From assembly GCA_002269645.1 (NCBI GenBank), contig NIVC01003566.1:35550-99549 (forward strand): DNA of 64,000 nucleotides. Reading direction: 5' to 3'. The translations under genes were made by a program, and so were the position numbers. The notes below the pieces were generated by a model. The model was not told the origin of the DNA. It saw nothing but the letters and a program-made list of their open reading frames with translations, and searched no databases. Shown here in pieces: positions 8,495-64,000 of this stretch (its first letter is position 1; each line of letters starts with the position of its first letter). The DNA is from Macrostomum lignano. Taxonomy: Eukaryota.

Positions 8495-11400
8495 ATGTCT
8501 CTAGACCCTGCTGTACAGAGGCGACAGCAGTTGCAGCCTAATCGGCACTATTCTTGTGACTCGGCAGAGATGCGCATAGCTGGGCAGTATGAGCTGCATC
8601 ACACCATTGGCCGGGGCCATTTTGCTGTTGTCAAACTAGCTAGGCACGTGTTTACTGGCGAACAGGTTGCCATTAAAGTTATTGACAAAGCTAAGTTAGA
8701 TTCGTCTAATCGAGAGAGCCTCTATCAGGAGGTGATGTGTATGAAGCTTGTACAGCATCCGAATGTTGTCAGGCTGTATGACGTAATTGATACGCCTAAT
8801 AAGCTCTATCTCATATTGGAGTTGGGCAACGGCGGTGACCTGTACGATTTCATTGTTCGACAGGACGACAACAGCGGATTAAAGGAGTCTTTAGCTAAGA
8901 GTTTCTTTTATCAGATTGTCACTGCAATTGCTTATTGTCATCGGTTGCACGTGTGTCATCGAGATTTAAAATTAGAGAACTGTGTTGTATTCGAACGACT
9001 GGGCGTTGTTAAACTGACCGATTTCGGTTTCTCCAATGTGTTCACGCCTGGCAAGTATTTGGAAACCTCTTGCGGCTCGTTGGCCTATTCGGCGCCGGAA
9101 ATTCTGCTTGGCGATTCCTATGATGCGCCTAAGGTGGATGTCTGGTCGCTAGGTGAGCTTCTGAGTTTTGTAGCAGGCTCTCTAGAGATTAAGGATGCCA
9201 AATTGGAAACCCAGCTGGCAGCAGTCAAAGCATATCTATACCCTATGCTTTTGATCTGTTAAGCCTCTGACCTCTGACTACTGAGAATCCTCCATACGCT
9301 GCCTGCAAGGGGCCTTGGCTGTTTCTTGCCTTAGTCTATGGGCCATAGTCGATTGTCGATTGTTTTGTATAACAGAAACAGAAACAGATACAATTGATGT
9401 TGCAAAGAATAAAATGAAATGACTGTGATGAGTCGCTGGCTGTCTACAGATGAAGCAATAGGCATTTGGACTGCAGAGTATTGTATTAGATATAAGTGAT
9501 AAATGCAAGTAGGCAACATCCCTTGTGGGTGTTGGAGAGGCAATGGTCAAGGAGGGTTGAGCTCGCAGGGGCTGGAGAGAGCTGGGAAAGAGAGAAACCG
9601 ATCGATTCTCAGTTTGGGTTTCTTTTTATCACTTTGGTTGGCTTTCACAGTCTTAGCCCATAGACTAAGGCATGAAACAGCCAAGGCCCCTCGCAGGCAG
9701 CGTATGGAGGATTCTCGGTTTAAATGGCTTTTTTCTCAGTTAGGCTGTCAAAAACACTACTTGAACTAATTACATTAAATGACATTTAGCTCCTCTTAGA
9801 GTGCATTTTAATGAGTATCTAATTATTCTAAATCACGGGAAATTTTGAAATGTAAAATATAAAAACTAGCTAATAAGCAGTGTCGATAAGCGCGTGACTT
9901 ACCACCGCTGTACCCCCTGTGTGAGCGGGTGTGTGAGTGTGTGCCTGCCTACGGTCTTGGCGCGCTTGTGTGTGGGCAGAATCGTGTGTGGCCAAGCGCA
10001 GCGGAATGGCGCAGAATCGCTGCACCTCTGCATGGTTGTGGGACAAAGTCACCGAGGGCGTTGCGCCTGGGTGCCCACAAAATAACTTTTGCAATGATTA
10101 AAATGATTGACAAGTGTCGCTCATCGTTCATACCATCGTTTGACAGGCGTGATCCTATTCATGCTAGTATCCGGTCGACTGCCATTTCAAGAGCCTAACG
10201 ATTCCGAGACCTTAGCTCGCATTATGGACGTGCGTTACAAAGTCCCTAAGCACGTTACCGACCAATGTCGCAGCCTAATTAGCCGATTATTGCAGCGGGA
10301 TCCATCGAAACGGCCAACTTTGGATGGCATACTAACTGACGATTGGTTTGCCGACGTGCAGCATAGCGTCTACGATGAGAGGCCATTGATTAGTCTGGGT
10401 AGGATTAGTCAGGCTGACCAACAGGAGGTTATTGGCAAGATGGTGAGTAGCAGATGTTAGAGACAGTCCTGGGTTTTGGTTTACATTCATATTTTCTGTC
10501 CTAATGTACATCCATGCAATTTTCTCTCTTGCCCAGTGTACATGCTTGCTGTTTATCTCTGCCCCAGTGTACATCCAGACTGTGTGCCCCAATGTACAGT
10601 TTGGTTCTCTGTCCCAATGTACATTGAGTTTCTCTGTCCCAATGTACAGCCAGATTATCTGCCTCAATGTACATTCATGCAGTTTTCTCTCTGCCCAGTG
10701 TACAATCATGCAGTTTTTTTTCTGCCCATTGTACAACCAGATTCTCTGCCCCAATGTACATTGAGATTCTCTGCCCCAATGTACATTCCGATTCTCTGCC
10801 CCAATGTACATTGAGATTCTCTGCTCCAATGTACATTCAGATTCTCTGCCCCAATGTACATTCCGATTCTCTGCCCCAATGTACATTCGGATTCTCTGCC
10901 CCAATGTACATTCAGATTCTCCGCCCCAATGTACATTCCGATTCTCTGCCCCAATGTACATTCAGATTCTCTGCTCCAATGTACATTAAAATTTTCTGTC
11001 TCGGTGTCCGTTCAGTTTGTCACAAACTTGCAGTCGATTTAAACAATTTGAACTGTCGCACTGCAGGTGGACGGCGGCCTAGCAACAGAGCAGGAGATAC
11101 TCGAAGCATTAGAACGCGACGATTACAGTTACATTACGTCCACGTTTTATCTGCTAGCTGAGAGGTTAATTAAACGGAACCTAGCATCTCCGGCCGCGGG
11201 TTCTTCCGCTCGACATTTGCTGCTACAACATCAGCAGCATCAAAGCCAGCGAAAGACATCGGATCCGTCTGCATTGTCGGCAGCGAGTGCTGACATTCAG
11301 CAGCAGCAACAGCAAGCATCCAGCGGCGGCGGCAGCAGTCGACAATCTTCGTCTGCTTCGCTTAGCGTTGAAGAGAAACTGCGCCGTTTCTCAATGATTC

Positions 11401-15799: not shown

Positions 15800-45432
<29,633 letters not shown>

Positions 45433-45934: not shown

Positions 45935-48900
45935 TCAATCAGATTCTGATTCTTCGCCAGATACCATCGATGCAGCCAGGTGCACCTCCTCAACTGAGGG
46001 CGCGCTTGTGCGACCTGCAGAACAATTGGAAAGAATTTCATTCGATTCGGTTTAGCTTGGGGACACCTAACCTCACCTACCTAGGTCTGTCTACTCTACC
46101 ATTTCTTTCTGTAAAAGACACACACAGACAGGCAGACAGACAGGCAGACAGACAGGCAGGCAGACAGACAGACAGACAGACAGGCACTCACGCTCGCGTC
46201 CCCGCTCAACAATGGAGTTGGCCCGCATGGCCAGCCTGGCGGTGGCAGCGATGGCCTCCACCGGAGAGCCGTCCTGCCTCGCAGCCGCGTCTCCAGCCAC
46301 GTCGCCCTCGGCGCCACCAGAAGGATTAGCGAACGCGGTCGTCGCCGACCGAGTCACGGTGGACTCGTGCGGCATGAGTCGTTGCGGCGATCTGAACAGG
46401 TAGTTGCTAGGGTAGTGCCGCAGGTTGGTGACCCGCTGGGCGTAGATATCGGCGTAGCGCTCCAGCTGGTAGGCGAAGCTGGTCAGGCGGCCCCCGGACC
46501 GGAACAGCGAGCCCAAGAAGCCGTAGGCGGTGTCCATCTGGCGGACAACGTCGCGAATGTCGGCGCGAATGCGTTGGACCTCGTTAGCCGGCGGTCCCGG
46601 GTTCGAATCGCTGGCAGCTAGAGTGCAGTGAAGATACATTCGGCCCATCTCGGCTTCCAAGCGTTGCAGCCTCTCGAACAGCTGCTGGTCCTGCTTCCAC
46701 ACGAATAGCTCGTTCGCCAGTTCAGGAACAATGAGCAGGGTGCGCCAGCCGACCTTCTTGGACTTGATGATGTCGCCGAAGATGTGATCGCCTGCGTACA
46801 GCACGTCTTTGCCGCGGCAGCCGATTAGGCGGGAGAACTCGGCGCAGGAGCCTGCGGAATGTGATGGGGAATGTTTCTGTAAGCTCCTTGGGGCGTCAAT
46901 TTAGTTGCGCTATTGAGGGTGATAATTGATCCTTTTAATTAACCTGTGCAACTTCATCTAATAAGGCTTTCTAATCTTGCTAGGTGAGGTGTTAGTCAGA
47001 GATCTCATTGAGAAGGGAGAGATCTCATCGAGAAGGGAGAGATCTCATTGAGAAGGGAGATATCTCATTGAGAAGGGAGAGATCTCATTGAGAAGGGAGA
47101 GATCTCATCGAGAAGGGAGAGATCTCATTGAGAAAGAAGAGTCAGTTTTAAAAAAAATCGATATCCCCAATAGCTCTAATAGATTTACATGTGTAGCCAA
47201 TATGTTGCGTAAAATACTTTACAAAGCAGAATTCTACATGGACATAACAAGTTGGCGCACTTTAATTTTAACACAAATTTAAACACTGAAACTAAAATCA
47301 GATTAATTCACCTACCAATACGTCATAAAAAACAGATACCCTCAATATAGCTGTAATAGCTGTAACCCTCAAGATGCATATACATTGCCGATATGTAGCG
47401 CAAAATACTTTTCAAAGCGGATTTCTACATAGACTTAATAAAGTTAACAAACTTTGTTTCAATTGAAGCCACTCACCACCCGAATAGACCACGCCAGACT
47501 GCAGCGGGCCCATGTGAGTACCCAGCTTGAGCTTGCCGCTAGAGCGATCAACCACGCGCAGTAGGCTACCCTCGGCGAAGAACTTCGGCTTGCAGGCGCT
47601 AACTAATACGTAGTTGAATATGCCCACCCAGTCGGGGCCCAACAGGTAGGACATGAGAGCGTCAGTGTACCAATACTCGGAATTAGTCAGTAGAAACACC
47701 TTCGCACCCGTAGCCTTTAACTGCTCCAGTAGATCCAACAGATCCGAGTCGGTGTGAACAAACTCGTCGATCTGTTCAACGGTGAGACGTTTCAACGAGT
47801 CGTCGTTGTGAATTGCGTCTGCCGCGCCTCGAACGTCATTGAATAGGGAGCGGTACGAGATGTTGAGCTCCTGGGGATTGGAGGGACAGCACACAATAAC
47901 GGTGAGATAGGGTGAGAACGGGGAAAGCAGAAAGAATCATAGTGCCCTCAAACAGACCTTGTACACAATGCCGTTCCGTTCCACCGAAGCCTACGGCAGG
48001 GCCTTGAAGAACTCAATGATGGAGGCCATGCAGTAGATCTCCGGCAAATTAAACAGAGTATCGTACACATAGAACCTGTCGCTCAGCTGTACAAACTTAT
48101 TCTCGTACCAGGAGTGAAGCTCAGCGGACGGCACTACTGTTAGGCCAAATAGGCAGCTTAATAAATTGCCAAACGAATCCACTTTAAGTAGGCAGCCGCG
48201 ATCTTTGTCAAACCACAAGCCTCTGATAGGGAATGTGTGATCGTATTGGAATTTGAGTATCTCGCTGGGGTAGCCAATGTCAACCAGGCGGTTGAGCATT
48301 AAACGGAAGGCTGCAGATTCGTAGCTGGGTGATTTGTACTGGGCAAGGGTGTAGTCCATGTCGAATCCGTAGAACTTGATGCGGTCCAGCTGCAGACTGC
48401 GGTTCACGAATATTCTGGGCAGAGGTCAGTGGGGGAGGTGTGCACTGGTGAGGGATCTTTGTAGGCTAAACAATATTCATAAAGTACTTTGGCTGGACCA
48501 GCCTCCCAGTTCCTTAGTTGCTGGGCCAGCCTCCCAGATCCTCAGTTTCTGGGCCAGCCTCCCAGATCCTTAGTTGCTGGGCCAGCTTCCCAGTCCTTAG
48601 TTGCTGGGCCAGCCTCTCAGATCCTCAGTTGCTGGGCCAGCCTCCCAGATCCTTAGTTGCTGGGCCAGCCTCCCAGATCCTTAGTTGCTGGGCCAGCTTC
48701 CCAGTCCTTAGTTGCTGGGCCAGCCTCTCAGATCCTCAGTTGCTGGGCCAGCCTCCCAGATCCTCAGTTGCTCTGCCAGCCTCTCAGAGTGTCAGTTGCT
48801 GGGCCAGCCTCTTAGATCATCAGATGCTGGGCCAGCCTCCTAGAGTGTCAGTTGCTGGGCCAGCCTCCCAGATCCTTAGTTGCTGGGCCAGCCTCCCAGA

Positions 48901-49390
48901 GTGTCAGTTGCTGGGCCAGCCTCCCAGATCCTCAGTTGCTGGGCCAGCCTCCCAGATCCTCAGTTGCTGGGCCAGCCTCCCAGAGTGTCAGTTGCTGGGC
49001 CAGCCTCCCAGAGTGTCAGTTGCTGGGCCAGCCTCCCAGATCCTCAGTTGCTGGGCCAGCCTCCCAGATCCTCAGTTGCTGGGCCAGCCTCCCAGAGTGT
49101 CAGTTGCTGGGCCAGCCTCCTAGAGTGTCAGTTGCTGGGCCAGCCTCCCAGATCATCAGTTGCTGGGCCAGCCTCCCAGATCCTCAGTTGCTGGGCCAGC
49201 CTCCCAGATCCTCAGTTGCTGGGCCAGCCTCCCAGATCCTCAGTTGCTGGGCCATCACCCTTCATCGTCAAGCAATAAGCGACCATTCTCAAAAGCAAAG
49301 CACGCACCTGTGACCAGTCTCACGCTTAAGCAATTGAAATTCGGAAGACTTCTTCTCCGACCAAGTGTTGGCTCTGCTGTAGTAGTCCAT
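45935..49390 (-). CDS. NT5C2: Cytosolic purine 5'-nucleotidase cN-II (HAD family), 5 exons, 557 codons, with one internal TAG at codon ~169
   Basis: Exons (minus): 49308-49390, 47958-48414, 47477-47870, 46192-46851, 45935-46014. Motifs: HR-IFVNRSL, HAD motif I GFDMDYTLAQY, FLLTNS, KPKFF, YAGDHIFGDI, acidic C-terminus (GEESESD*). In-frame TAG at 47991-47993, so this may be a nonsense allele or pseudogene copy. Confidence 0.88.
47000..47135. repeat. 20-bp minisatellite GAGATCTCATTGAGAAGGGA, NT5C2 intron 3
   Basis: About 6 units. Confidence 0.9.
48490..49255. repeat. 28-bp minisatellite TCAGTTGCTGGGCCAGCCTCCCAGATCC, NT5C2 intron 1
   Basis: Tandem units. Confidence 0.94.
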
Positions 49391-49478
49391 GTCCAGTCTT
49401 TGCAGGATGTGTTTACAAAATGCTCTACCGTAGTTCTATTTATATTAATTTAATTCCAAGTCATCCAATTGGGAAGCT

Positions 49479-49487
49479 CTGAAAAAA
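49479..49487 (-). promoter_or_regulatory. Unpaired acceptor TTTTTTCAG upstream of the NT5C2 ATG (candidate SL trans-splice site)
   Basis: Strong pyrimidine tract plus CAG, 88 nt before the ATG and ~350 nt after the upstream gene's AATAAA. Confidence 0.45.
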
Positions 49488-49828
49488 TGGGCAATCTATA
49501 TAATAATAATGACTACTAAATATAGAATTATGTCAGCTATTTACAGATTTCTTTTGAGGTAGAAATATTTTTCCAAGAAAACAATCAATCTGGCACAAAC
49601 GTTAATTAGGAAGGGCGGTTGCCAGGCAAACGAAGATTTGCCTATCAATTATAATACCATAAATAGGACTCTTATTCGCCTTGGATCCTTAGCTTCATCC
49701 ACATACCTAACCGTCTATATAATAAAACTACTTATAAGTAGTGTAAACGCGCATCAACAAAAGGTAGAAAAAAAGAAAATCAAAGAAACACTTTAATACA
49801 ACAAAAAAAGAAACGATCACAGAGGGTT

Positions 49829-49834
49829 TTTATT
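49829..49834 (-). terminator. Putative exonuclease polyadenylation signal AATAAA
   Basis: About 130 nt after the stop, followed by U-rich sequence. Confidence 0.5.
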
Positions 49835-49962
49835 CTAAAACAGTTTTTTACAGAATTTGTCTGGTTGGCTTCTAGTTTGTTTTAATCCAGTGTATTTGTT
49901 TTTTAATAGGAAAATAACTCTCTAAAGACTGCTTATAGTAGGCGCAGTATAAAGCGCGCCAG

Positions 49963-52900
49963 TCACCAGTATTTGTCATCGACTAGCAGATTGTCGGCAT
50001 CTCCAGTCTGCCAGGTGCCAACAAAGCCAGGCCTCACTTGTCGTCTGGCTGTTAACTTGGCTGTTGATTCGGGATTTGAGTAGGATAATTCATGTAGGCG
50101 CGCTCTCTGGCGCTCTTTCACTGATGCAGCTGCTTTGTCGCCATTGCTTGCCTGCGTAAAATAGTTTTAGAGCGATTGGCGCTGAAATCCAGCCTCTGGC
50201 GCTAAAATCCAGCCTCTGGCGCTAAAATCTAGCCTGTGACGCCAAAATCTAGCCTCTGGTGCTAAAATCCAGTCTGTGACCCTAATATCTAGCCTGTGGC
50301 GCTAGTTTAGCCTGTGGCGCTAAAATCTAGCCTGTGGCCCCAAAATCTAGCTTGTGGCGCTAAAATTTAGTCTGTGACTTTGTGGCGCTAAAATTTAGTC
50401 TGTGACTTTGTGGCGCTAAAATTTAGTCTGTGACTTTGTGGCGCTAAAATTTAGTCTGTGACTTTGTGGCGCTAAAATTTAGTCTGTGACTTTGTGGCGC
50501 TAAAATTTAGTCTGTGACTTTGTGGCGCTAAAATTTAGTCTGTGACTTTGTGGCGCTAAAATTTAGTCTGTGACTTTGTGGCGCTAAAATTTAGTCTGTG
50601 ACTTTGTGGCGCTAAAATTTAGTCTGTGACTTTGTGGCGCTAAAATTTAGTCTGTGACTTTGTGGCGCTAAAATCTAGCCTGTGGCGCTAAAATCCAGTC
50701 TGTGGCGCTAAAATCCAGTCTGTGGCGCTAAAACCCAGCCTGTGGCGCTAAAATCCCGTCTGTGGTGCTAAAATCTAGCCTGTGGCGCCAAAATCTAGCT
50801 TGTGGCGCTGAAATTAGTTTGTGGCGCTAAAATCTAGCAGCTGTAACGCTAAAATCTAGCCTGGGGCGAAAATCTAGCTTGTGGCGCTGAAATCTAGTTT
50901 GTGGCGCTAAAATCTAGTCTGTGGCTCTAAAATCGAGTTTGTGGCGCTAAAATCCAGCCTGTGGCTCTAAAATCGAGTTTGTGGCGCTAAAATCCAGCCT
51001 GTGGCGCTAAAATCTAGCCTGTGGCGCTAATATCTAGCCTGTTGCGCTAATATCTAGTTTGTGGCGCTTTAAACCAGCCTGTGGTGCTAAAATCTTGTCT
51101 GTGGCGCCATAAACTAGCCTGTGGCGCCATGAACCAGCCTGTGGCTCTAAAATCTAACCTGTGGTGCTAAAATCTAGTCTGTGGCGCTATAAACCTGCCT
51201 GTGGCGCCATAAACCAGCTTGTGGCGCTAAAATCTAGTCTGTGGCGCTAAAATCTAGCCTGTGGCGCTAAAATCTAGTCTGTTTGCGCTAAAATCTAGTC
51301 TGTGGCGCCATAAACCTGCCTCTGGCGCCATAAACCTGCCTCTGGCGCCATAAACCAGCCTGTGGCGCTAAAATCTAGTCTGTGGCGCTAAAATCTAGTC
51401 TGTGGCGCTAAAATCTAGTCTGTGGCGCTAAAATCCGTCTGTGGCGCTAAAATCTAGTCTGTGGCGCTAAAATCTAGTCTGTGGCGCTAAAATCTAGCCT
51501 GTTGGCGCTAAAATCTAGCCTGCTCACCTGATCAGACCCATCGTCAGACTCCTTGCCCAGCTCGGGAGCTCGCACTCCCAGCTGAGACTCCCACTCCTCG
51601 GCAACCAGATGATACAATTTCAGGCAAGCGTCGGCGTCTTCAACTGAGTCGTGCTCGCGCTGCTGGATTCTCAGATTGAGCAGAGCGAGGGAGAGACTGC
51701 GCAGACTGGCCGGCCGCTTGCCCTGGGGCGGCATGCCAGCCTTGGCCTTGGCGTGGGGTGGGTGGGGTATCGGGTTGATTGGGCGATAATTGTTGTCTTG
51801 AAAACTGTAAGGCTCTGGGCGTGAGATAACGGATGGTGCATAAGGTGAGACAGGGGTGAGACAGGGGTGAGATAGGGGTGAGACAGGGGTGAGATAGGGG
51901 TGAGACAGGGGTGAGACAGGGGTGGGATAGGGGTGAGACAAGGTTGAGATTTAGGTAAGTAGGGGTGAATGAGATAGATGTGAGAAGGTGCGAGACAGGA
52001 GTGAGATTAGGTGAGATAGGTGTGAGATAGGGGTGAAACAGGGACTGTGAGGTATAGGTAAGATAGGGGTGAGAGTGAGATAGGGGTGAGATAGAATGAG
52101 ATATGGCTGAAACAGGTGTGAGACAGGGAGATAAGGGTGTGATATGGGTGAGAAAGAGATGAGAACACTCGGCAGTCCAGAAGGCTCACCTGCAGCAGGA
52201 CGCACTTGCTAGTGTCCCGAACCAGACCCTCCGGATGGTGCAATCGCAGCACTCTTAAATCGTTATGCAAAGCGTGACCAACTAGAACTCGACCCCGTAC
52301 AGCCCGACGGACCAGATCCTGAACGGCGTCGAATGGAAGGCCGCGTGAGAGGTCGGCAGCTCGAATGCCGCTCCATCTGGTTCGGTAATCTGTTACTGGC
52401 TCGTCTGGCAGGCACATCACATCTAGCAGCACCTGACAGGTGGATTGGGAGACAGATTAATGAGCATCGTCTACCATGCCTTATCTACTCCAGTCCATGA
52501 TCTACAGTCTACCCCAGTCCATGATCTACCGTCTACCCCAGTCCATGATCTACCGTCTACCCCAGTCCATGATCTACAGTCTACCCCAATCCATGATCTA
52601 CAGTCTACCCCAATCCATGATCTACAGTCTACCCCAATCCTTGATCTACCGTCTACCTCAATCCATGATCTACAGTCTACCCCAATCCATGATCTACAGT
52701 CTACCCTAACCCTGATTTACCATAACTATCTACCCCAAATCCATGATCTACCATAACTATCTATCCCCAATCCATGATCTACCATAACTATCTATCCCCA
52801 ATCCATGATCTACCATAACTATCTATCCCCAATCCATGATCTACCATAACTATCTATCCCCAATCCATGATCTACCATAACTATCTACTCATCCAATCCA

Positions 52901-53505
52901 TGATCTACCATAACTATCCACTCACCCAATCCATGATCTACCATAACTATCTACTCACCCAATCCATGATCTACCATAACTATCCACTCACCCAATCCAT
53001 GATCTACCATAACTATCTACTCATCCAATCCATGATCTACCATAACTATCCACTCACCCAATCCATGATCTACCATAACTATCTATCCCCAATCCATGAT
53101 CTACCATAACTATCTACTCACCCAATCCATGATCTACCATAACTATCTATCCCCAATCCATGATCTACCATAACTATCTACTCACCCAATATAGGCAATA
53201 ACCCATTCAAAAAGTCTCACATCTCCTCTCTCGTTGAGCACGCTAGCTCTTCCTAGAGCGCTAACGCTGCCTCTTGGCCCGGTGCCAACAAATTCGCAAT
53301 CAATAGCCACCACTTGAGTGGCTAAGCTGGGCTCATCTAGGCGAACAATGTTAGTTCTAATAATTGGCAGCGCCTTTGACCGAGAAAAGAAATTGTTACG
53401 AATATTTAAACGGGCACGTTTGACTCCGATGGACTGCTGCTTAGCTGATGCACTTAGTCGTTTTGTACTTCCGACAGCGCGTTTTTCATGAGAAGTTGAT
53501 GCCAT
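49963..53505 (-). CDS. DEDDh 3'-5' exonuclease, ISG20L2/AEN-like (REXO4-related family), 4 exons, ~311 aa
   Basis: Exons (minus): 53221-53505, 52190-52432, 51528-~51746, 49963-50151. ExoI VAIDCEFVGTGPRG, DYRTRWSGI, ExoII VGHALHNDL, RDTS, ExoIII HDSVEDA, ends DDKYW*. YRTRWSG and GTGP favour ISG20L2/AEN over REXO4. The exon 3 acceptor is ambiguous by 6 nt. Confidence 0.85.
50170..51520. repeat. 20/29-bp minisatellite TGTGGCGCTAAAATCTAGTC, exonuclease intron 3
   Basis: Tandem units with a homogeneous 29-bp sub-block at ~50355-50665. Confidence 0.94.
51840..52160. repeat. GGGGTGAGA(C/T)A array, exonuclease intron 2
   Basis: Tandem 13-bp units grading into degenerate copies. Confidence 0.85.
52470..53190. 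repeat. 27-bp to 33-bp CCAATCCATGATCTAC minisatellite, exonuclease intron 1
   Basis: Two related unit lengths. Confidence 0.93.
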
Positions 53506-53533
53506 TCGCTGCTAGAGAAAGTTGAAAATTTAC

Positions 53534-53552
53534 CTGCAAATTGGAATGAAAA
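53534..53552 (-). promoter_or_regulatory. Unpaired 3' splice acceptor 28 nt upstream of the exonuclease ATG (candidate SL trans-splice site)
   Basis: Minus strand ...TTTTTTCATTCCAATTTGCAG|G, ~460 nt downstream of the inferred ERCC1 cleavage site. Confidence 0.5.
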
Positions 53553-53589
53553 AAGATTCTCTTCAGTTGCTTGTTATGAGCGATTCAGA

Positions 53590-53955
53590 AATGATCAAGG
53601 GCGAATCTCAGGGTAGATCGAGGGCGATTCTTGGGGTAGATTGAGGGCAAATCTCAGGGTAGGTTGATGGCGATTCTCAGATCTCAGGGTAGATTGAGGG
53701 GGATTCTCAGGGTAGATTAAGGGCGATTCTCGGGGTAGATTGAGGGCGATTCTCGGGGTAGATTGAGGGCAAATCTCAGGGTAGATTGATGGCGATTCTC
53801 AGATCTCAGGGTAGATTGAGGGCGATTCTCAGGGTAGATTGAGGCGATTCTCGGGGTAGATTGAGGGCGATTCTCGGGGTAGATTGAGGGCCAATCTCAG
53901 GGTAGATTGATGGCGATTCTCAGGGTAGATTAAGGGCGATTCTCGGGTAGATTGA
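53590..53955. repeat. 23-bp array GGGTAGATTGAGGGCGATTCTC between ERCC1 and the exonuclease gene
   Basis: Reverse complement carries the GAGAATCGCCC core. Confidence 0.9.
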
Positions 53956-54011
53956 CACAAAACACAAATTTGAAGCGTTAACAAACACCGATAAAGACCT
54001 TAATTGAATAG

Positions 54012-54017
54012 TTTATT
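54012..54017 (-). terminator. Putative ERCC1 polyadenylation signal AATAAA
   Basis: TTTATT on the plus strand, downstream of the ERCC1 stop. Confidence 0.5.
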
Positions 54018-54229
54018 ATTTTGATATACACAAAAATGCAGTGCGCAAGTTGCAGAAAACAGGCAGAAGTTACATGATAGTTCAAAATTAGGTTGCGAAG
54101 ATGCAAAATATTTTTTCCGGTTTCTAGGTAATGGTTTCTCGGAACAAAATACATTTATGAAGGAATAAAAGTGAGAAGAGTGGCCAGGAGGTTAGTGGCT
54201 GATACCTATCAATAATTAGAGACTAATAG

Positions 54230-54570
54230 CGGCATTTGTGAGACTTATCGTGAGATAAGAATTGAGATAAGGACGAAATAAGGGGTGAGATGTAGATGAG
54301 ATAGTGTGAGATATGGTTGAAGTAAAAGGGTGAGATAGGAGCGAGCTACATGTATGCGTGAGATAGGGATGGGTAAGGGTGAGATGAAGGTAAGAAAATG
54401 AGATAGGGGTTAGATGGGTGAGATAAAGGTGAGATAGGGATGAGATATCGGTGGATGGGGGTGAGATGGGGTAAGATAGGGATGAGATCGATGAGATATG
54501 GGTGAGATAAGGGTGAGAAACATGGATGAGAAGACAGGGTGAGTGAGATACGGATGAGATCGGGAACAAT
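54230..54570. repeat. Degenerate GGTGAGATAGG array downstream of the ERCC1 stop
   Basis: Loose tandem units, bracketed by donor- and acceptor-like sites on the minus strand. Confidence 0.75.
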
Positions 54571-54604
54571 GAGGAGACTAATCCCAGACACAGACCATCA
54601 GCCT

Positions 54605-55412
54605 TCAGTCAGCGAAGTTCTGCCCGAACACAGCGGTGAGCCTGGCGGCCTTCTTCGGGCCCAGGCCGGGGCACCGCTCCAGCTCGGCGCTGCTGGCTCC
54701 AACCATGGCCTCGAAGGTGCCGAAATTGGCAGCCAAACAGGCCGCGTCTGTCCGGCTGACGCCTCGGACGCATCCCAAGACGTCTCTGAGCTGTCCCGGC
54801 CAGTCCTCGGCCGAGCGTTCCATCAAACTATCGGCCGGTTTCTTCTCTAAAGATTTGAAACTCTCCAAATAACGAGCAGCCTCTTCGTTGCTCCAAGCCA
54901 GTATCAGAGTTGAGCCGGCTAGCAAACAGATCCGATTTAATTCTCTAACAGAATCGGAATATTCCTGCGTGTCTACTAACAGTAATAGAATGCGCAAGTC
55001 GTAATCTTTAGGGCCAAGCTGTTTGAGCCGGCGGTGCACATAGTCTGGGTGCAGGCAGTGGTAGCGAACGGACAGAAACAGAGCGCAGGCTGTCCGGCCA
55101 AGGACGAAATCGGCCGGATCTGCTAAATCCGAATACTCCCAGGGCACCGAGCGAATGAGCGGCAGCAGAGGATTGCCGCGCTGCCGATTGTTAACTAGTA
55201 TTCTCTGCTGCTGCAACTGCTGCTGCTGCTGCTGGTCCTTCTGCTCCTGCTGGAGCTGCTGGGCGGCCACTTTGATCACGCCTGGCAGGGGGTGAGCCTT
55301 TGGCAGCGTGCTAGCACTACTGGTCTTGCTCGGCTCAGGGTCTTTGTTGCCTGCTTTAAATTAACAAGTTTGTGGGCTATGTAATCTATGTGAATGATAT
55401 TGTATCTACACT

Positions 55413-55480
<68 letters not shown>

Positions 55481-55913
55481 CAGACAGACTGACAGACAGA
55501 CAGACTTTATTTTAACAAATTGTAAGGGATTTTCATTCTAAGCATGGAAAATTCCACATAACAGATTGTCATGAGTTATTTATCTTAAACAGCATACCAC
55601 TAGTGCAGTCAGTTGATGAAGGCCCACACTCAGTGCCAATAGAACCAGCTGATGCTGACTTTGCCCCTTCAGCTCGAGTGGCAGCAAATATTGCTCCAGG
55701 GGTGAATTCGGCATCACCATTAGGGTTTGAGCGCCATTTAGCAACTCCATTGCCACCATTGCTGTCAGATATCTCATCTCTACCATCATTATCATCACCA
55801 ATTATTGCAATATCAATTTGTACTCTAGGCTTTTTAGAAAGGTTTTCATCTGTTTTAAAGCCATTATCAGGAGCAACATTGTCAGACAATGTGCACTTTG
55901 GTGGCAATGACAT
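54605..55913 (-). CDS. ERCC1: DNA excision repair protein ERCC1 (XPF partner), 2 coding exons, ~353 aa
   Basis: Exon 54605-55350 carries ILVNNRQRGNPLL...VPWEY...DFVLGRTACALFLSVRYHCLHPDY, LILAWSNEEAARYLE and HhH2 CPGLGPKKA. The first exon 55598-55913 is a disordered N-terminus, less certain, and joins in phase 1 (G|gtatgc ... aagcag|GC). Confidence 0.9.
55413..55503. repeat. (GACA)n microsatellite, ERCC1 intron 1
   Basis: Tetranucleotide run. Confidence 0.95.
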
Positions 55914-57408
55914 AATCTAGTTTTTTTTTTATCAGATGACTCTTGAGGTTAAATTCTGGAATATTTAGAGCAAGTAATACGAGTACATTAATATTTGTGC
56001 ACGTGAGTACATACACATATAGCAATTATAAATATAGAAGATTTATCTAAGCAAGTATCTTTAGCACTAATACCCAAAAATAATAATCAACCAGCCAAAT
56101 TATTATATTCTAATTAAAATTCAAAATATTATAAATTTCCATTACACTGGAAATATATAAATAATATATTGGTTAGGCCTATAAAAAGCCAAAAAATGCT
56201 TGATAAATATTATTTAATATAAAGTTCTAGAAAATTCTGTAGAATTTCATTCTTAGCTTAATGATTATGCAACAAAATATACAACACTAGAATTGACAAA
56301 CTCCAGCCTAAAAACCACATGCCATATATAAAGCCTCTTTATCTGTTAAGAATAGGTTTAAGACTAGATTAAGACCTAGGTTAACTTAGGTTAGGCCTAG
56401 GAAATTAGGAAATTTAATGTAAACAAAGCATGGTTAAGTGTAGGCCCTAATATACATAGCAGTTATAAATAGCTATATTTTTATAAAGTCACAAGTGTTT
56501 AATTATGGCATTGTGTAAGGCAAATACAAGCTACCTTAAAAGTATTTTTACTCTATTATGAAACATGTCTTTTATGAAACATGGATTTAACCCTATCTAA
56601 TCTAGGCCTAGGTCTAAGAGTAAGTTATTTTATATATATGTAATATATAAATAAGGAAAGTCTAGGATTCTAAGATTCTAAGTATAGATAAATAGTGTAT
56701 TATTATTTAATGTGAACATTTTGAAGCCAAAGGGGTTTTGATATAAAGGAAAACTTGTTGTAAATATTGCAATAGTTTGAAATTTATTCTTTATAAATTA
56801 TATAGGCCCTATCTACTAAATTTTACTTTAAGTTTGCTATTATTTCAAACTCTCAGTTCACTAGGCCTACTAGGCCCTAACCTATATATATTCGATAATA
56901 TAAACTAGTTAGGTTTAAGATAGTCATGGTAGGCTTAGTGCTAAGTGGCTAGTCTTTCCTTTGATATGCACAGGTCAACAGAAACAATTTAGTAATATAA
57001 GCTAGGATAGGGCATAGAATGACAATGTTCCAGTTTTCCACTCAATTTTTTCACTGATAAAAATGTGTCACAATAGGCCTACTTGGTAAAGTCAAAATAT
57101 AGGGATCAACCTAAGAGTTTTCACACAAGATAATAATGGGAAATCCAGTAGAGTATATTCCCAAATTGGTTGCCTAGGAACAGATGGCACCACATGAACT
57201 TTGCATATTCCATGCATTGCTTGGAACTTTGCTTAGCAATTCTCCAACACTCACTTAGATTGTCTCTAAAAATTTCAGATGTCTTCTCGTAAAAAAACAA
57301 GGAATAAGCTGCTTTGGTATAGAATCAAGTAAAGCACTGGGCGAGTGGCTATTATTATGGTATAGAAGCAACAACTCATACTCACAGCCTCTTTATATTG
57401 GCTCCTCT

Positions 57409-58333
57409 GTGTTCAAGCATTTGAATGACCATGAAAAATCTTTGCTCCAAAAAGGCAACTCACTCAAAGTTAAAGAAGTTAAAAGCCAAGTAGAATGTGT
57501 AGTCATGCATTGTGGCTTGATTGACTTGTGTGGGAAGGCCAGTATTTCTATTAAAGATCTTGTTGAGCATGGCAATGATAACCGATGCCATACTAAATAA
57601 GCTTGATAAACAAGAGAGCCGCGCCCAACTTTTGGACGTAGCTGATTGGGACCCTGATATTGATGCTGAAGAATATGAAGAAGAAATTGCAAGTGGTGAA
57701 AGCAGCCAATCTGCCTTTAATGAGGAAGCTGAGGTGGCTAAAGCGAATCCTGGATTCAAACTAACGTCTCAATCATCATCTTCTAGCTCTACTATGTTGC
57801 GCAATGAGATGCAAAAGCTGCAATTGTACAAGAGGGCTTTTGCATCTGCTTCACATTCACAGCCAGCAAGGAAAAAGCCTCAAACTGACCATTCTTATCA
57901 TCTGGGCAGCAAGAATGCTGATCATAGAAGACAAATTATTCAGTTGGCACCATCAGCATAGGGCAATAGCCATTTTCCTAGTTCACCTAGTGTAAGTCGT
58001 TATGTTTGTGCTGGTCAGGAAAATCTGCCAAGGCAAGCATCACCATCAATGCTGAGTAAGTCTGACCAAGCCACTCTTTAGGTCTTGCTTGAAACTAGGC
58101 TGCAGACTTCTCTACTAAAGAAGTTGGCCAAGTTGATTGAAGAAATGAATCAATTGCTTCAAAATCTGGGCACTTCACGGCCACGCTCTGAAGGCTTAAA
58201 TCCAGACCAAATTGATTCTTTCTTTGGCACATTTGATGGCAAGCAGTGCAGTCTCTCCAGTCTAAATCAATCTAGCCCAATTTTTTTTGCTTGTGACTTT
58301 GTGTGGTATCAATTTAAATTTATCAGTATCTAA
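57409..58333 (+). pseudogene. Decayed coding sequence, possibly retroelement ORF1/gag-like
   Basis: One frame is open 57521-58333 except two TAGs (57959-61, 58079-81). An upstream 63-aa piece (57409-57600) lies in another frame. Protein-like acidic/coiled-coil composition; no clean splice model. Confidence 0.3.
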
Positions 58334-59467
58334 AAGACAAAATAATTGACCCTAATAAGACATTGAAGCGGGTGAAGCTGCATGATGCTGCAAAAGAGGA
58401 AATAATCACAGCACTAGACAACTTCTAGGCCACTAACTACAGCTGGCGTTTGGTGAAGAGCTCCTTAAACCAGATGTTTTGCAATCTGAAATAGATTTTA
58501 TAGACTGTATGCTTGTATGATCCTAGACTTTTCAAAATGTCATCTTTTAGGTTCTTTATAGTTCTTTTGGTTGAAACACAGCCCCAGTTCTTACTAAATT
58601 TAAGTAATTTTTTATGGCTGCATAACTTTTTTATTCTTATTTTTTGTTCTTTATAACTGTGTCATGACTTGCATTGTTTGCATATTATTTCTGTTTTTAA
58701 GTTCCACTAAGCGAAAATTACAATTCCTTATTTTGTGGCTATTAATTTTGCATCATTATGGTAAAAATAATGTTAGCTAAAATTCACATTTTCAGCTCAC
58801 AATTTGTGATGTCTAAGGATGAGGTTTCTGATCTGAGCTTAGTGCTTGAGTCAATTGCCAAAGATTTATTTGAAGATGAATCTATTTCTGAGGCTTCAAC
58901 ACACAGTAGTACTGTTAAACAATGAAATTGCTCTAATTTATGTTTCTGCTTTAATTTGCCCATGTGTGACTTTATCTCTACCTTTTTGAACAAAAGTTAT
59001 ACAGTTGTCTCACCAGTGGACTTTTTTGCTGAGTACCACTAGGTTTCCTTCTTGCAGATGTGACATGTTTTTCATTTCCCTAACATACATTGTCTGCTTT
59101 CATTTTTTTCTTTACTTTGATTTGCTTTATTTTTCCTATTATCAATCAACTATACTAAAAGTGAAATTTCTGTGGGATTGATTTTAGCAATGCACCATTT
59201 GATTACAACTTCTCTTGAATTGGCACATAATTATTGCCAATCTAACTGGGGGATTATTGCAAACCAGAATTGGGGTTATTGCGACTGCGAGCCTGTAATG
59301 CAATATCAAATTATTGGCTGGTGCAATATCATTTCATTTTGAGATACTGGCATACTAATTAAGCAAGCTAGCTTTTTCTATGTAAAACATGATTGTAGGT
59401 TTTTTGCTCTCTATGCAATATGTTAGCCACTGCGAAAATTTTACCATTTGCAGATAATAATAATGTC

Positions 59468-59760
59468 CATACATGCGCAACAGTCGGCCAAGTCGGCCGA
59501 TCCGGCTGACCAATTTAACGGCCAACCAAGGAAGTCGCAAAAATGCCCACCCAAAAAATTCCTAAGTAGTACTAAGTAGCTAACGAGGCATTTTGGCTTA
59601 ATAAGACAGTCATAGTTACTCCTGTCGTTTACCCAAAGTTGTGTTAAATTTGCTTTACGGTTTTTCACATGTAAGTCGCATTTTTGGCCAAAAACTATGT
59701 CGCATTTTGTTAAAAACTAAGTCGCACGGCCGACCAAATTTTGGAGGTTGCGCATGTATG
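59468..59760. mobile_element. 293-bp MITE with 14-bp TIR CATACATGCGCAAC and 8-bp TSD
   Basis: TIRs at both ends; ATAATGTC duplicated at 59460-59467 and 59761-59768. Confidence 0.9.
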
Positions 59761-60101
59761 ATAATGTCTAGTGCGTAGTACCATCTTAATAGTAGAAAAT
59801 CGATTGCAATAACACGTACTTGCATTGTACTGCATAATGTTTCCTATGTTACTTCTTTAATGTTAACTCAATGTCTGTGTTTTGAAATTAGGATTAATAT
59901 AAATTCTCACTTAACTATTTACTATATGTACTGATGTTTAGAAATTTGGGCTTTATACTTGTAGTTCTGAAGTACATTATAGTTAAATTTTGGATTAAAA
60001 AAATTACATAAATTGTAAAAATTAAAATTTCTTACAGAAAGCAAATTATGAAAATTATAATTAAATTAGTCAAAATTGAAAAATTACATTTTATTGGACT
60101 A

Positions 60102-60272
60102 CATGCTTGGGCGCAACCTTGGGATTCACTCGGCCGTTTCTATTGGCAACACACACATGTAAGTCGCTATTGGACGGAATAGTAGTCACGTGACTGCTCT
60201 CAGCCAATAGCGACTTACATGCGTGTGTTGCCAATAGAAACGGCCGGTGATTCCCAAAGTTGCGCATGTATG
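60102..60272. mobile_element. 171-bp palindromic MITE with related TIR and 8-bp TSD
   Basis: TTGGACTA at 60094-60101 and 60273-60280. The element folds back on itself around GTCACGTGAC; right end GTTGCGCATGTATG is identical to the 59468 element. Confidence 0.85.
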
Positions 60273-60365
60273 TTGGACTATAATAAATTGTAAGAATTGC
60301 ATAATTTTTACACAATTTTTCATCTAATTTTTTGCAATTTTGACAATTTTTGTCTACTAGTATAG

Positions 60366-61049
60366 TAGAGCTGTCAAAATTAGAGATTTTATTCGAGACG
60401 AGATTAGAGACGAGAAAGGCTTATAAGTCGAGAATTTCGAGATGAGACAAGACAAAGTAAATCTAAAAAATATATTTCAGAATTGCATCTTGTCTTGCTC
60501 TTATCTTGCCTTATCTTGTCTTAAATTTCTTGATAAGATCCAATTCTAAAATATATTTTTTAGATTTTCCAGAATATTTTCTTAATTCTAGTTTAAATTC
60601 TTTGCTATTTATTCATAAGAATTTATGCTTGTAGCATATAGGCCCTTGGCCCTACTATGTCTATTACTAATTTGTCAAAAGACCTGTGTAGATTGTCTTC
60701 AAGTCTGCTATGATACACCTTGCTGTAGAACTGAAATGATAACTAAAAGAGTGCATATGCAATGCAAACTCGTATATAATGATGTTCATTAAATAACTGC
60801 TCGACATTGGCTAGATTTTACCATTTGAAAATTGCCCTATCAAGCATGTTACAACAAACAGTTGTATTTATATGAAAATTTGCTCCCCTTTTTATATCTT
60901 ATCACTTAAAAGCTTTTGAAAAAAGGTATTAGAAAAATTCTTGAATCTTGTCTCAAATTTCTTGACAAAATTCGAGATTTCTTGAGATGAGAAAAAATGT
61001 CGAGATCTTGTCTTGAATCTTGTCTTGTCGAGATCTTGTGACAGCTCTA
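60366..61049. mobile_element. 684-bp hAT-like non-autonomous element
   Basis: 11-bp TIR TAGAGCTGTCA/TGACAGCTCTA; TSD TAGTATAG at 60358-60365 and 61050-61057; subterminal GAGAC(G/A)AG repeats. Confidence 0.88.
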
Positions 61050-61560
61050 TAGTATAGTAGCATGCAGATTTGTTAAGTGCTATGATTTGCATTGTTCACT
61101 GGGCCTAATTATTTGTGTTTGGTATGCATAGCCTAAATAAAAAAATTGTTCCAAAGACGAAGTAGTAATTATGTATGTTTGAACTAATAAAAGTCCATTT
61201 ACTGCAGACCGCAAAAATTCTAGGACCCATATCCAATTTGTCTGCAAGAAAAAGTTGTTTTGTCTGCCAGTAGACAAAAAAGCAACAGATGAAATAATCT
61301 GCACACCTCAAAATTATTAAGGGTCTTGGAAGTAGAGGGAGTGATTGACTGTCACTCTATCAAATAGTTGGCCAAAGTGTTGTATATAGGCCTATGATAC
61401 CCATGCTAAAATGCATTTTACATGTAAAAACAAACTAGAATGAGAAACTATGAAAGAGATTGCCTATGGCTCATATAACAATACAATATTATTAAATAGG
61501 CCCTATATATAAAATATAATATATTGAACTATTAATATGTTTGCCTTAATAAACATAGCT

Positions 61561-61841
61561 CGTATATGCGCAACTGCTGGCCGAACTGGCCGATCCAGCC
61601 ACCGTAAATTGTGGTAGACCAGGGGTAAGTCGCAAAAATGCCCATCCCAAAGAATATAGATACAGATATAGTACTAATTAGATGACAAGGCATTTAGCCC
61701 TTATAAAACAGTTATAGTTACTTCTGATGTTTACCCAAAATTGTGTTAATTTTGCTTTAGGGTTTTTTTCACAGGTAAGTCACATTTTTGGTCAAAAAGT
61801 AAGTTGCATGGCCAGTGTAAATCAGGGGTTGTGCATGTATG
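61561..61841. mobile_element. Diverged second copy of the 59468-59760 MITE
   Basis: Colinear internal similarity (AAGTCGCAAAAATGCCCA, TTTACCCAAA.TTGTGTTAA) with degenerate TIRs; TSD not preserved. Confidence 0.8.
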
Positions 61842-64000
61842 TTAATAAAGATGACTAGCAAACAAAAGGCTAGGACCCTATTGGAATAAGTTTTCAGACA
61901 CTGTGGACAGTGCATCTAGTGCGCCATGGCAATCATAAAGTGGCCTGGACGGTGCGTCATGACAATCTTCAAATCCTAAGGTGGTATGGACGATGTGTCA
62001 TTCAATCTTCAAATCCTAGGGTACCATAGCACTCTAGGTTTAGGTGATATTGTGCATGACTCCAGTCTCTATCATGTTCATTCTGATGATGCATCACTCG
62101 TTTTTGAGAGATTTAAAGAGATTGAGAGAAAGTTGTGTGTTTTACCGCACTTGTGTTTTACTGCACTCTGTTCTGTACTGTACTTCTGCCCCTTCTGTTG
62201 TAGTTGTATCTATTTCTTAATTCTTAGTCTACTCGTCTTTTGACTTACAAAGTTACATTGTTGGTCTATTCAAAGAAAAATAAATAATGTAAATAGTGTG
62301 GCAATTGCATCAGTGAGTACTTAAAATAATTACGAACACTGAAACCCTTTACTTCAATTTGGCTAATCGGTTAATACAAAATGAAGAAACTCCGTGATGA
62401 ACAACACAGAGTTCACGAACAAACAAAATTGTCTTTGCCTTATCCACACACTTTTCAGTAGTAGTTGTAGCACTTTGGCTTGGGTCGGGTTATCAAATCT
62501 GATAACTATTTAGCATGGTGTTTCGAAGAATATTTTCACATTTAAATGTCAGCATAAATAAATGTATGCGCAACCAATCAAAAAGATAATTAAACAAAGC
62601 AGAAAATTTGTTGAGACTTTAATAGAATTTAGTTTACTTTTATTTCTTGCAACTGCGTTATAAGAGAACATTAAGAGCAATTAGCATTTGCACTATGTTA
62701 TAATGTTTATGAGGCAATAAAGAACATTTCTGCTGGCGATCTTTCACTACAATTTCCAATTTTACGATTAACTTGCATGCATATTCTAGATGACACAGCA
62801 ATCAATACATATGATAGGAGATATGCTATACTATAGCCATAGCAATATTATCAAAGTTATAGAAATTAGAAAAACAAGTTTTACTTACAGTTTGCTGAAT
62901 TTCCACCGTGCTGCTGACTTTCTCCTGTGCATGCTTCTCATCCTTGTTTAGCAGCGCTGTATGTAGCGCGTGATGTCCTCCTTGCATCTTACCTGTGAGC
63001 TGCTGTTGCGTCATGGCGCATGGCGCGCGTAGCGCGCCATGCGCCATGACTGTGAGGAAAAAGAAAAAGTGCGCCGGACGCCGTCCCGAAAAATACCACT
63101 TATTCCAATAGGGGGCTAGGAGAGTTATTAGGCCCTAATTATTAATCATATATAAGTTCTTAGTTTATAGCCAACTAGAAATTTATATACAATTTTTTCA
63201 ATTATTTTCATCCTCTCCTTTCCTATCTTTCTTTCTTCTCCTCTCTTTTCTTTTTCATTCTTTTTCTATATTCCCTTGCCTTTCTTCTTCTATCTTTTCT
63301 ACCTAGTAGTACAGCTAATAGCCTAGGCCTTATCTTCTTTATTTCCTTTGACCATCTCCTCTCCCCCTCCTCTGCCCACAGTCATGCACATGCACAATGC
63401 AATGCAATGCAATGCACTAGCCTACCCACTACCCTTAGAGATTATTTATCTAGCCATTGAGGCAAAAAAGTTTGCTAACTCCTGATGTAACAGAATTATA
63501 AAATAGGTTTCTGAAACTAAAGAGTCCAGCTGTGCTATTCTAATTTTTTTATTAGGCACAGGACAGTACCTACATCATACACAACACCTATAGCTATGCC
63601 TATATCATATATAAGTTCTTAGTTTAGTTTAGGTACATAGGCCTAGCATAAGATAGATTGATAGAATACTAATTTTCTAAACGAAAAGCTTTATATGATA
63701 ATTAAAATATCAAAAGATGAACACTGGGTCTCATTGAAGTCATTTTTATCAAAATAAATAAATGACTATTTTTTACTGAAAAATGAAACATCCTGTTTCC
63801 ATACTGTATTTTTCGTTAAGACGCAAGTTGCCTCCTAAAATTTTCCCAAGAACGTAATAGTACTAAGTAGTACTTGCCGTATTTGTATTGGTAATTAAAA
63901 GAATGTTTTCAAGGTTTTGATTTTAAATTTTGACTTTGAACAAATACATTATAAAAATACTTTGCCAACGTGCTCAGTTTCACCACTTAAGACACTAAAG

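What the first reader, a model, noticed from the sequence alone, without database searches (positions are those of the whole stretch)
45935..55913. Candidate SL-trans-spliced operon: ERCC1 > ISG20L2/AEN-like exonuclease > NT5C2
Three co-oriented genes are packed with short spacers. Each upstream gene has an AATAAA (54012, 49829) followed ~350-480 nt later by a strong acceptor (53534, 49479) with no convincing upstream partner exon. The second spacer is U-rich in sense orientation. This is the layout of polycistronic units resolved by spliced-leader trans-splicing, which is established in flatworms and nematodes. The products share a theme: repair endonuclease subunit, 3'-5' exonuclease and purine 5'-nucleotidase, i.e. 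nucleic-acid cutting through to nucleotide catabolism. Co-regulation is inference.
Basis: inference. Interest (0 to 1): 0.7.

Follow-up and report, generated by a model that had tools for sequence, protein, structure and literature searches.

The report
Ordinary flatworm operon candidate, partly annotated
Three housekeeping genes lie head-to-tail in the flatworm Macrostomum lignano and are probably read as one RNA and separated by spliced-leader trans-splicing, which is routine in this species, and part of this cluster already shows in the public annotation.

Summary
The window is the last 64 kb of Macrostomum lignano scaffold NIVC01003566.1 (Mlig_3_7 assembly). In detail: ERCC1, an ISG20L2/AEN-like exonuclease and NT5C2 lie co-oriented on the minus strand. 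The AATAAA signals and AG acceptors are at the stated coordinates.

The operon reading is plausible but not new. [quoted passage not shown] Both spacers meet that paper's spacing rule. Spacer 1 shrinks to 120 nt once its minisatellite is removed, close to the published peak of about 100 bp.

GenBank locus tags give the exonuclease and NT5C2 the same transcriptional-unit prefix (Mlig006192). ERCC1 has a different one.

Three caveats apply:
- One YTNCAG acceptor per spacer is what chance gives.
- The "strong" acceptor at 49479 is CAG only in this haplotype and CTG in the two others. A conserved TATAAATA lies 54 nt before the NT5C2 ATG.
- I could reach no RNA reads, so SL addition is untested.

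This copy of NT5C2 carries an in-frame TAG. The nucleic-acid "theme" has no support. Interest is low.

The parts
55956..55961 (-). Candidate trans-splice acceptor TTCCAG, 42 nt before the ERCC1 ATG
   Evidence: It matches the published M. lignano trans-acceptor motif [T/C]TNCAG. It is identical in all three haplotypes. Use is not shown.
54605..55913 (-). ERCC1 coding region: exons 55913-55598 and 55353-54605, 354 aa
   Evidence: Gene model. Pfam Rad10 E=3e-43 plus HhH. The protein is identical to GenBank PAA50783.1 / PAA72105.1.
54012..54604 (-). ERCC1 3' UTR ending in AATAAA (54017-54012), followed by a GU-rich stretch
   Evidence: The AATAAA is conserved in the other copies.
53598..53955 (-). 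23-nt minisatellite that fills 75% of spacer 1
   Evidence: TRF output. The unit count is 14, 15 and 36 in the three haplotypes. Removing the array leaves 120 nt between AATAAA and the acceptor.
53534..53540 (-). Candidate trans-splice acceptor TTTGCAG for the exonuclease gene, 28 nt before its ATG
   Evidence: It is the only YTNCAG match in spacer 1. It is present in the window and L001. In L002 it reads TTTCATG, and that copy has TTTTCAG 12 nt further downstream.
49963..53505 (-). ISG20L2/AEN-like DEDDh exonuclease gene, 4 exons, 311 aa
   Evidence: Gene model. Pfam PF00929. The protein is identical to PAA72104.1, BOX15_Mlig006192g1. Closest solved structure is 7yw5, human ISG20L2, E=1e-42. 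The gene is not annotated on this scaffold.
49829..49834 (-). AATAAA, 128 nt after the exonuclease stop codon, followed by a U-rich stretch
   Evidence: Conserved in L001 and L002.
49479..49487 (-).
   Evidence: It reads CAG in the window and in NIVC01001112.1. It reads CTG in L001 and L002, where an AG follows 2 nt later.
49437..49444 (-). TATAAATA, 54 nt before the NT5C2 ATG; a possible TATA box for the rival explanation
   Evidence: Conserved in all copies. The spacer is AT-rich, so this may be a chance match.
45935..49390 (-). NT5C2 gene, 5 exons, 557 codons, with an in-frame TAG at 47993-47991
   Evidence: Gene model. Pfam PF05761 E=3e-146. The codon is CAG in L002 and TAG in the window, L001 and L006. 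GenBank models only a 305-aa tail, PAA50782.1, Mlig006192g4.

Best explanation
This is an ordinary Macrostomum lignano tandem gene cluster of the kind already catalogued as operons.

The most likely mechanism is as follows. RNA polymerase II starts upstream of ERCC1 and reads through all three genes. Each upstream message is cleaved and polyadenylated after its AATAAA and GU/U-rich element. The 35-nt spliced leader is then trans-spliced onto an AG acceptor a few tens of nucleotides before the exonuclease ATG and the NT5C2 ATG.

What is shown: the gene order, the signals and the spacing; the fact that this species uses this mechanism widely; and the fact that the exonuclease and NT5C2 were assembled as one transcriptional unit in the published annotation.

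What is inferred: that ERCC1 is on the same precursor, which acceptor is used, and that the leader is added at all.
For: Organism and known biology:
- The window is 100% identical to NIVC01003566.1 of Mlig_3_7.
[quoted passage not shown] The repeat-adjusted spacing between trans-spliced genes peaks near 100 bp, and the operon cut-off is 1 kb.
- 45% of genes conserved with human are trans-spliced.

Spacing and signals:
- Spacer 1 is 478 nt from AATAAA to the acceptor, and 120 nt without its minisatellite. Spacer 2 is 350 nt.
- Neither spacer has a GT[GA]AG donor.

Acceptor upstream of the exonuclease:
- Every haplotype keeps at least one YTNCAG within 28 nt of the ATG, although its position shifts. 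The window has TTTGCAG only, L001 has both, and L002 has TTTTCAG only.

Published annotation:
- The exonuclease is Mlig006192g1, g2 and g5. NT5C2 is Mlig006192g3, g4 and g6. The numbers are consecutive on two scaffolds.
- The authors' rule is that genes cut from one transcriptional unit share its prefix.

Context:
- No annotated gene lies within 8-10 kb upstream of ERCC1.
Against: - I found no RNA evidence. No M. lignano transcript contigs turned up for the exonuclease or for the NT5C2 N-terminus, and the paper supplements do not list these genes.
- ERCC1 has a different transcriptional-unit prefix, Mlig020298.
- One YTNCAG match per spacer is the chance expectation.
- The acceptor at 49479 is CTG in two of three haplotypes, including the one whose NT5C2 is intact.
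- A conserved TATAAATA lies 54 nt before the NT5C2 ATG.
- A merged transcriptional unit can also arise from 3' read-through, or from the assembler joining neighbouring genes.
Confidence: 0.5

Rival explanations
1. A two-gene operon. The exonuclease and NT5C2 are co-transcribed, and ERCC1 is a separate upstream gene that ends at its own poly(A) site.
For: - The exonuclease and NT5C2 share the prefix Mlig006192, while ERCC1 is Mlig020298.
- ERCC1 has a complete poly(A) signal with a GU-rich downstream element.
Against: - A promoter for the exonuclease would have to fit into about 120 nt of unique sequence around a minisatellite whose unit count varies from 14 to 36.
- The authors warn that assembled transcriptional units split at repeat-rich operon spacers, which could explain the separate prefix.
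- The repeat-adjusted spacing of 120 nt is close to the published operon peak of about 100 bp.
Confidence: 0.2
2. No operon. These are three closely packed genes, each with its own promoter. NT5C2 would start about 30 nt after the TATAAATA at 49444. Any shared transcriptional unit would be read-through or an assembly merge.
For: - The TATAAATA is conserved in all copies, 54 nt before the ATG.
- Two of three haplotypes have no YTNCAG acceptor in spacer 2.
- The acceptor motifs occur at chance frequency.
- 70% of M. lignano genes are not trans-spliced.
Against: - The exonuclease and NT5C2 share a transcriptional-unit prefix.
- Spacer 1 has no TATA-like motif.
- According to the paper, short repeat-adjusted distances are typical of pairs of trans-spliced genes.
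- TATA-like strings are common in this AT-rich spacer.
Confidence: 0.2
3. The acceptors at 53534 and 49479 are cis-splice acceptors for short non-coding first exons that lie in the spacers.
For: Nothing positive. Only RNA data could exclude it.
Against: - Neither spacer contains a GT[GA]AG donor, the motif at about 65% of M. lignano donors.
- Spacer 1 is mostly minisatellite.
Confidence: 0.05

Closest known systems
Macrostomum lignano SL trans-spliced operons (Wudarski et al. 2017, PMC5730564; Ustyantsev & Berezikov 2021, PMC8629364)
   Same: - Same species.
- Same-strand neighbours with a repeat-adjusted spacer under 1 kb, and repeats that inflate the spacer.
- A [T/C]TNCAG acceptor before the downstream ATG.
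- Conserved housekeeping genes.
- Three-gene size, as in 18% of catalogued operons.
- The exonuclease and NT5C2 share a transcriptional-unit name.
   Different: SL reads at these particular genes were not seen here. ERCC1 is named as a separate transcriptional unit. The second acceptor is polymorphic between genome copies.
Caenorhabditis elegans operons (SL2-type)
   Same: Co-oriented genes with roughly 100-nt intercistronic regions. 3'-end formation is coupled to trans-splicing of the downstream gene. There is a U-rich spacer.
   Different: M. lignano has a single SL and no specialised SL2. The U-rich tract here lies directly after AATAAA, where any poly(A) site has one, so it is not evidence for a Ur element.
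Parasitic flatworm operons (PMC12582326)
   Same: They are defined as same-strand genes with short spacers and an SL acceptor on the second gene. In Schistosoma mansoni the median intercistronic distance is 99 bp.
   Different: That study used a threshold of 300 bp or less. Raw distances here are 350-478 nt. I found no evidence that this gene trio is syntenic in other flatworms; the one locus checked, in Paragonimus, was uninformative.

Membership tests
M. lignano SL-resolved operon (criteria of PMC8629364) | Immediately adjacent genes on the same strand, with no opposite-strand gene between them | tested here: met
   Gene models and GenBank gene calls on four scaffolds.
M. lignano SL-resolved operon (criteria of PMC8629364) | Repeat-adjusted intergenic distance under 1 kb | tested here: met
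   From AATAAA to the candidate acceptor is 478 nt for spacer 1 (120 nt without the tandem array) and 350 nt for spacer 2. True transcript ends are not known.
M. lignano SL-resolved operon (criteria of PMC8629364) | The downstream gene carries the 35-nt SL at its 5' end, shown by SL-containing reads | not testable with these tools
   No M. lignano RNA contigs could be retrieved. Only the acceptor motif could be scored, and it occurs at chance frequency.
M. lignano SL-resolved operon (criteria of PMC8629364) | The genes lie on one precursor transcript (one transcriptional unit) | tested here: inconclusive
   The exonuclease and NT5C2 share the prefix Mlig006192. ERCC1 is Mlig020298, or Mlig026289g2 on one scaffold. 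This is indirect, read from locus tags.
M. lignano SL-resolved operon (criteria of PMC8629364) | A single promoter upstream of the first gene and none in the spacers | not testable with these tools
   No 5'-end or chromatin data were available. A conserved TATAAATA lies in spacer 2.
ERCC1/Rad10 | Rad10 central domain plus a C-terminal helix-hairpin-helix | tested here: met
   PF03834 E=3e-43, and HHH_5 E=3e-5, which is below its gathering score.
ISG20/ISG20L2/AEN DEDDh exonucleases | RNase_T-type exonuclease domain with the acidic and His motifs | tested here: met
   PF00929. Alignment to human ISG20L2, 7yw5, E=1e-42, with DCE, HNDxxxL and HxSVED aligned. Vertebrate AEN proteins were the best database hits, at 39-50% identity among the first hits listed.
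Cytosolic purine 5'-nucleotidase (NT5C2) | Full-length 5_nucleotid HAD domain in an open reading frame | tested here: not met
   The domain matches end to end (E=3e-146). However, this copy has a TAG at codon 169. The copy on NIVC01000012.1 is intact.

The most novel reading that the evidence does not exclude
The recently duplicated copies of this cluster may record fast turnover of trans-splice acceptors.
- Upstream of the exonuclease, the acceptor slides 12 nt between haplotypes, yet every copy keeps one.
- Upstream of NT5C2, a new consensus acceptor arose by a single T-to-A change, and only in the haplotype whose NT5C2 also carries a nonsense codon.
- The intercistronic minisatellite ranges from 14 to 36 units between copies, with all three ERCC1 and exonuclease reading frames still intact.

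If SL reads confirmed allele-specific site use, this would be a small natural experiment on how operon spacers and acceptors evolve.
Probability: 0.2. Interest if true: 0.35.

Novelty: already known. Interest (0 to 1): 0.15.

Why it matters
It matters little. SL trans-splicing and operons have already been mapped genome-wide in M. lignano, and the public annotation already treats two of these three genes as one transcriptional unit.

Three points have modest practical value for users of the Mlig_3_7 annotation:
- The exonuclease gene is missing from this scaffold's GenBank annotation.
- The NT5C2 copy here is a nonsense allele, modelled as a 305-aa fragment.
- Anyone designing promoter constructs for these genes should take the region upstream of ERCC1, not the spacers, until 5'-end data say otherwise.

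Tried and rejected
1. Transcript contigs. I looked for contigs that would show the SL joined to the exonuclease or NT5C2 5' ends. Protein searches returned only GenBank genome models for M. lignano and no Logan or other RNA-derived members.
2. Paper supplements. I searched those of PMC8629364, PMC5816591, PMC5730564 and PMC5173321 for the gene IDs and human gene names, and found nothing. A full-text search for Mlig006192 gave 0 papers.
3. SL RNA genes. There is no SL RNA gene, and no copy of the 35-nt SL with up to 3 mismatches, in the window. Rfam gave no hits at gathering score.
4. SL resemblance at acceptor 1. The sequence CAATTTGCAG|GTAAAT (CATGGTAAAT in L002) looks like the SL 3' end plus its donor. 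3-23% of random 220-nt tiles of the window score as well, so I rejected it as chance.
5. Locus-tag numbering. I first read the gN suffix as position within one transcriptional unit. That is wrong in detail, because numbering runs across all copies in a 95%-identity cluster. The shared prefix still ties the two genes to one unit family.
6. Synteny. The Paragonimus westermani NT5C2 fragment has no annotated gene in the 10 kb upstream or the ~2.4 kb to the contig end downstream, so it was uninformative and I did not pursue it.
7. The TAG codon. My first guess was that it replaced a Tyr codon. That was wrong: the intact copy has CAG, Gln.
Full report
**What the window is.** The exonuclease protein encoded at 53505-49963 is identical to GenBank PAA72104.1 (BOX15_Mlig006192g1) of Macrostomum lignano. 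A 21,720-nt stretch fetched from scaffold NIVC01003566.1 of assembly GCA_002269645.1 (Mlig_3_7) matches the window at every base. The scaffold ends exactly at window position 64000. The window is therefore nuclear DNA of a free-living flatworm.

**Checking the observation.** I rebuilt the three genes on the minus strand.
- ERCC1 has two exons, 55913-55598 and 55353-54605, and encodes 354 aa.
- The exonuclease has four exons, 53505-53221, 52432-52190, 51746-51528 and 50151-49963, and encodes 311 aa.
- NT5C2 has five exons, 49390-49308, 48414-47958, 47870-47477, 46851-46192 and 46014-45935, covering 557 codons.

The product lengths equal those of the GenBank models on sister scaffolds. Pfam confirms the identities: Rad10 at E=3e-43, RNase_T, and 5_nucleotid at E=3e-146. 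The exonuclease's closest solved structure is human ISG20L2 (7yw5, E=1e-42), and vertebrate AEN proteins are its best database hits.

AATAAA lies at 54017-54012 and 49834-49829. TTTGCAG|G gives an exon start at 53533, and TTTTTTCAG|A gives one at 49478. The distance from AATAAA to the acceptor is 478 nt and 350 nt. Spacer 2 is 42% T in the sense orientation. Neither spacer contains a GT[GA]AG donor, which is the dominant M. lignano donor motif.

Judged as statistics the signals are weak. Each spacer has one [TC]TNCAG match, where shuffling gives 2.0 and 0.9. The U-rich tract lies directly after AATAAA, where any poly(A) site has its downstream element.

**What is known in this species.** M. 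lignano adds a single 35-nt spliced leader to about 30% of its genes, and about 15% of its genes are assigned to operons. The trans-acceptor motif is [T/C]TNCAG. After repeats are subtracted, distances between trans-spliced neighbours peak near 100 bp. The authors call a pair an operon below 1 kb, and they note that repeats inflate operon spacers and break assembled transcripts (PMC8629364).

The genome annotation was built by assembling "transcriptional units" and cutting them into genes at experimentally mapped SL and poly(A) peaks. Genes cut from one unit keep its prefix, for example unit Mlig030697.1 and genes Mlig030697.g1 and .g2 (PMC5730564).

**How the locus fits.**
- Spacer 1 is 75% a 23-nt minisatellite (53598-53955). 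Without it, 120 nt separate AATAAA from the acceptor, close to the published peak of about 100 bp.
- Spacer 2 is 350 nt and has no tandem repeat.
- Both candidate acceptors match the published motif.
- ERCC1 has its own conserved TTCCAG 42 nt before its ATG.
- No annotated gene lies within 8-10 kb upstream of ERCC1.

**Evidence from the public annotation.** The locus tags are the most informative thing I found. The exonuclease copies are Mlig006192g1, g2 and g5. The NT5C2 copies are Mlig006192g3, g4 and g6. The pairs g2+g3 and g5+g6 lie next to each other on their scaffolds.

The two genes share no sequence similarity, so they can share a prefix only if at least one assembled unit spanned both. 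The 2017 annotation therefore already treated the exonuclease and NT5C2 as one precursor cut into two genes.

ERCC1 is Mlig020298g1-g3, and on one scaffold Mlig026289g2, so it was assembled separately. That fits separate transcription. It equally fits a unit broken at the minisatellite, as the authors warn can happen. Locus tags are indirect evidence, and a merged unit can also come from read-through.

**Comparison of genome copies.** The assembly holds three distinct haplotypes or duplicates of the cluster, each followed by a convergent GCN1 gene:
- the window, together with the redundant scaffold NIVC01001112.1;
- NIVC01003772.1 (L001);
- NIVC01000012.1 (L002).

Upstream of the exonuclease, the window has TTTGCAG (28 nt before the ATG) and TTTTCAA. 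L001 has TTTGCAG and TTTTCAG (16 nt before the ATG). L002 has TTTCATG and TTTTCAG. Every copy keeps a consensus acceptor next to the ATG, but not the same one. This is mild support for a functional acceptor.

Both other copies read CTG, with a poorer GAG 2 nt later. L002, whose NT5C2 is intact, is one of those two copies. The site at 49479 is therefore probably a recent change and cannot be the general 5' end of this gene.

A TATAAATA 54 nt before the ATG is conserved in all copies. This keeps an independent promoter for NT5C2 in play, although such strings are common in this AT-rich spacer.

**What I could not get.** I found no M. lignano transcript contigs for either downstream gene. No supplement that I could read lists these genes. 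SL addition, poly(A) sites and transcription starts at this locus therefore remain untested here.

My estimates are:

| Explanation | Probability |
|---|---|
| Three-gene SL-resolved operon | about 0.5 |
| Exonuclease and NT5C2 only | about 0.2 |
| Independent genes | about 0.2 |
| Cis-spliced non-coding first exons | about 0.05 |

The suggested functional theme has no support beyond adjacency. The exonuclease's closest characterised relatives, ISG20L2 and REXO4, are to my knowledge RNA-processing enzymes rather than DNA-repair enzymes.

Nothing here departs from what is already described for this species, so interest is low.

Noticed in passing
window 47991-47993 (minus strand): NT5C2 has an in-frame TAG at codon 169. 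The copy on NIVC01000012.1 has CAG (Gln) and a full 557-aa model. The TAG is shared by the window, NIVC01001112.1 and NIVC01003772.1. GenBank models only a 305-aa C-terminal fragment on the window's scaffold and on NIVC01003772.1; NIVC01001112.1 has no NT5C2 model. It is either a nonsense allele or a young pseudogene.
   Followed up: partly
window 49963-53505: The exonuclease gene is intact here but has no GenBank gene model on this scaffold, NIVC01003566.1. The identical gene is annotated on the redundant scaffold NIVC01001112.1.
   Followed up: yes
window ~45941-64000 versus NIVC01001112.1 1-19975: A second scaffold of the same assembly carries the same haplotype at the sites checked and stops about 6 nt before the NT5C2 stop codon. 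This looks like assembly redundancy rather than a true extra copy.
   Followed up: partly
window 1-55505, e.g. 50177-51522, 52484-53190, 48492-49254: Minisatellites with 18-36-nt units fill 72-98% of four of the seven introns in these three genes (the other three: 0-38%), and 75% of spacer 1. None scoring 250 or more lies in the gene-free, AT-rich 8 kb upstream of ERCC1 (55.5-64 kb). Several arrays share the core AGAATCGCCC: 16929-17445, 40493-41167 and 53598-53955.
   Followed up: no
window 32000-38000 and 46000-54600: The octamer ATCTCACC occurs 31 times on the minus strand and never on the plus strand. It appears in the ERCC1 3' UTR, in exonuclease intron 2, and inside the oppositely oriented GCN1 gene.
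   Followed up: no
window 55351-55356: ERCC1 intron 1 ends in a tandem AAG|CAG acceptor. Using the upstream AG gives the 354-aa GenBank protein, and using the downstream AG gives 353 aa.
   Followed up: yes
ERCC1, window 54605-55913: On one of the two scaffolds that carry this exact protein, ERCC1 is tagged Mlig026289g2. That makes it the second gene of a different multi-gene transcriptional-unit family. I could not identify the partner gene g1.
   Followed up: no
window ~33348-45432 (plus strand): A GCN1 homologue (2743 aa in GenBank) converges on NT5C2, leaving about 500 nt between the two stop codons. A 1407-codon open frame at 33348-37571 runs straight through a 2-kb 29-nt minisatellite.
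   Followed up: no
window 8459-9262 (plus strand): [quoted passage not shown]
   Followed up: no
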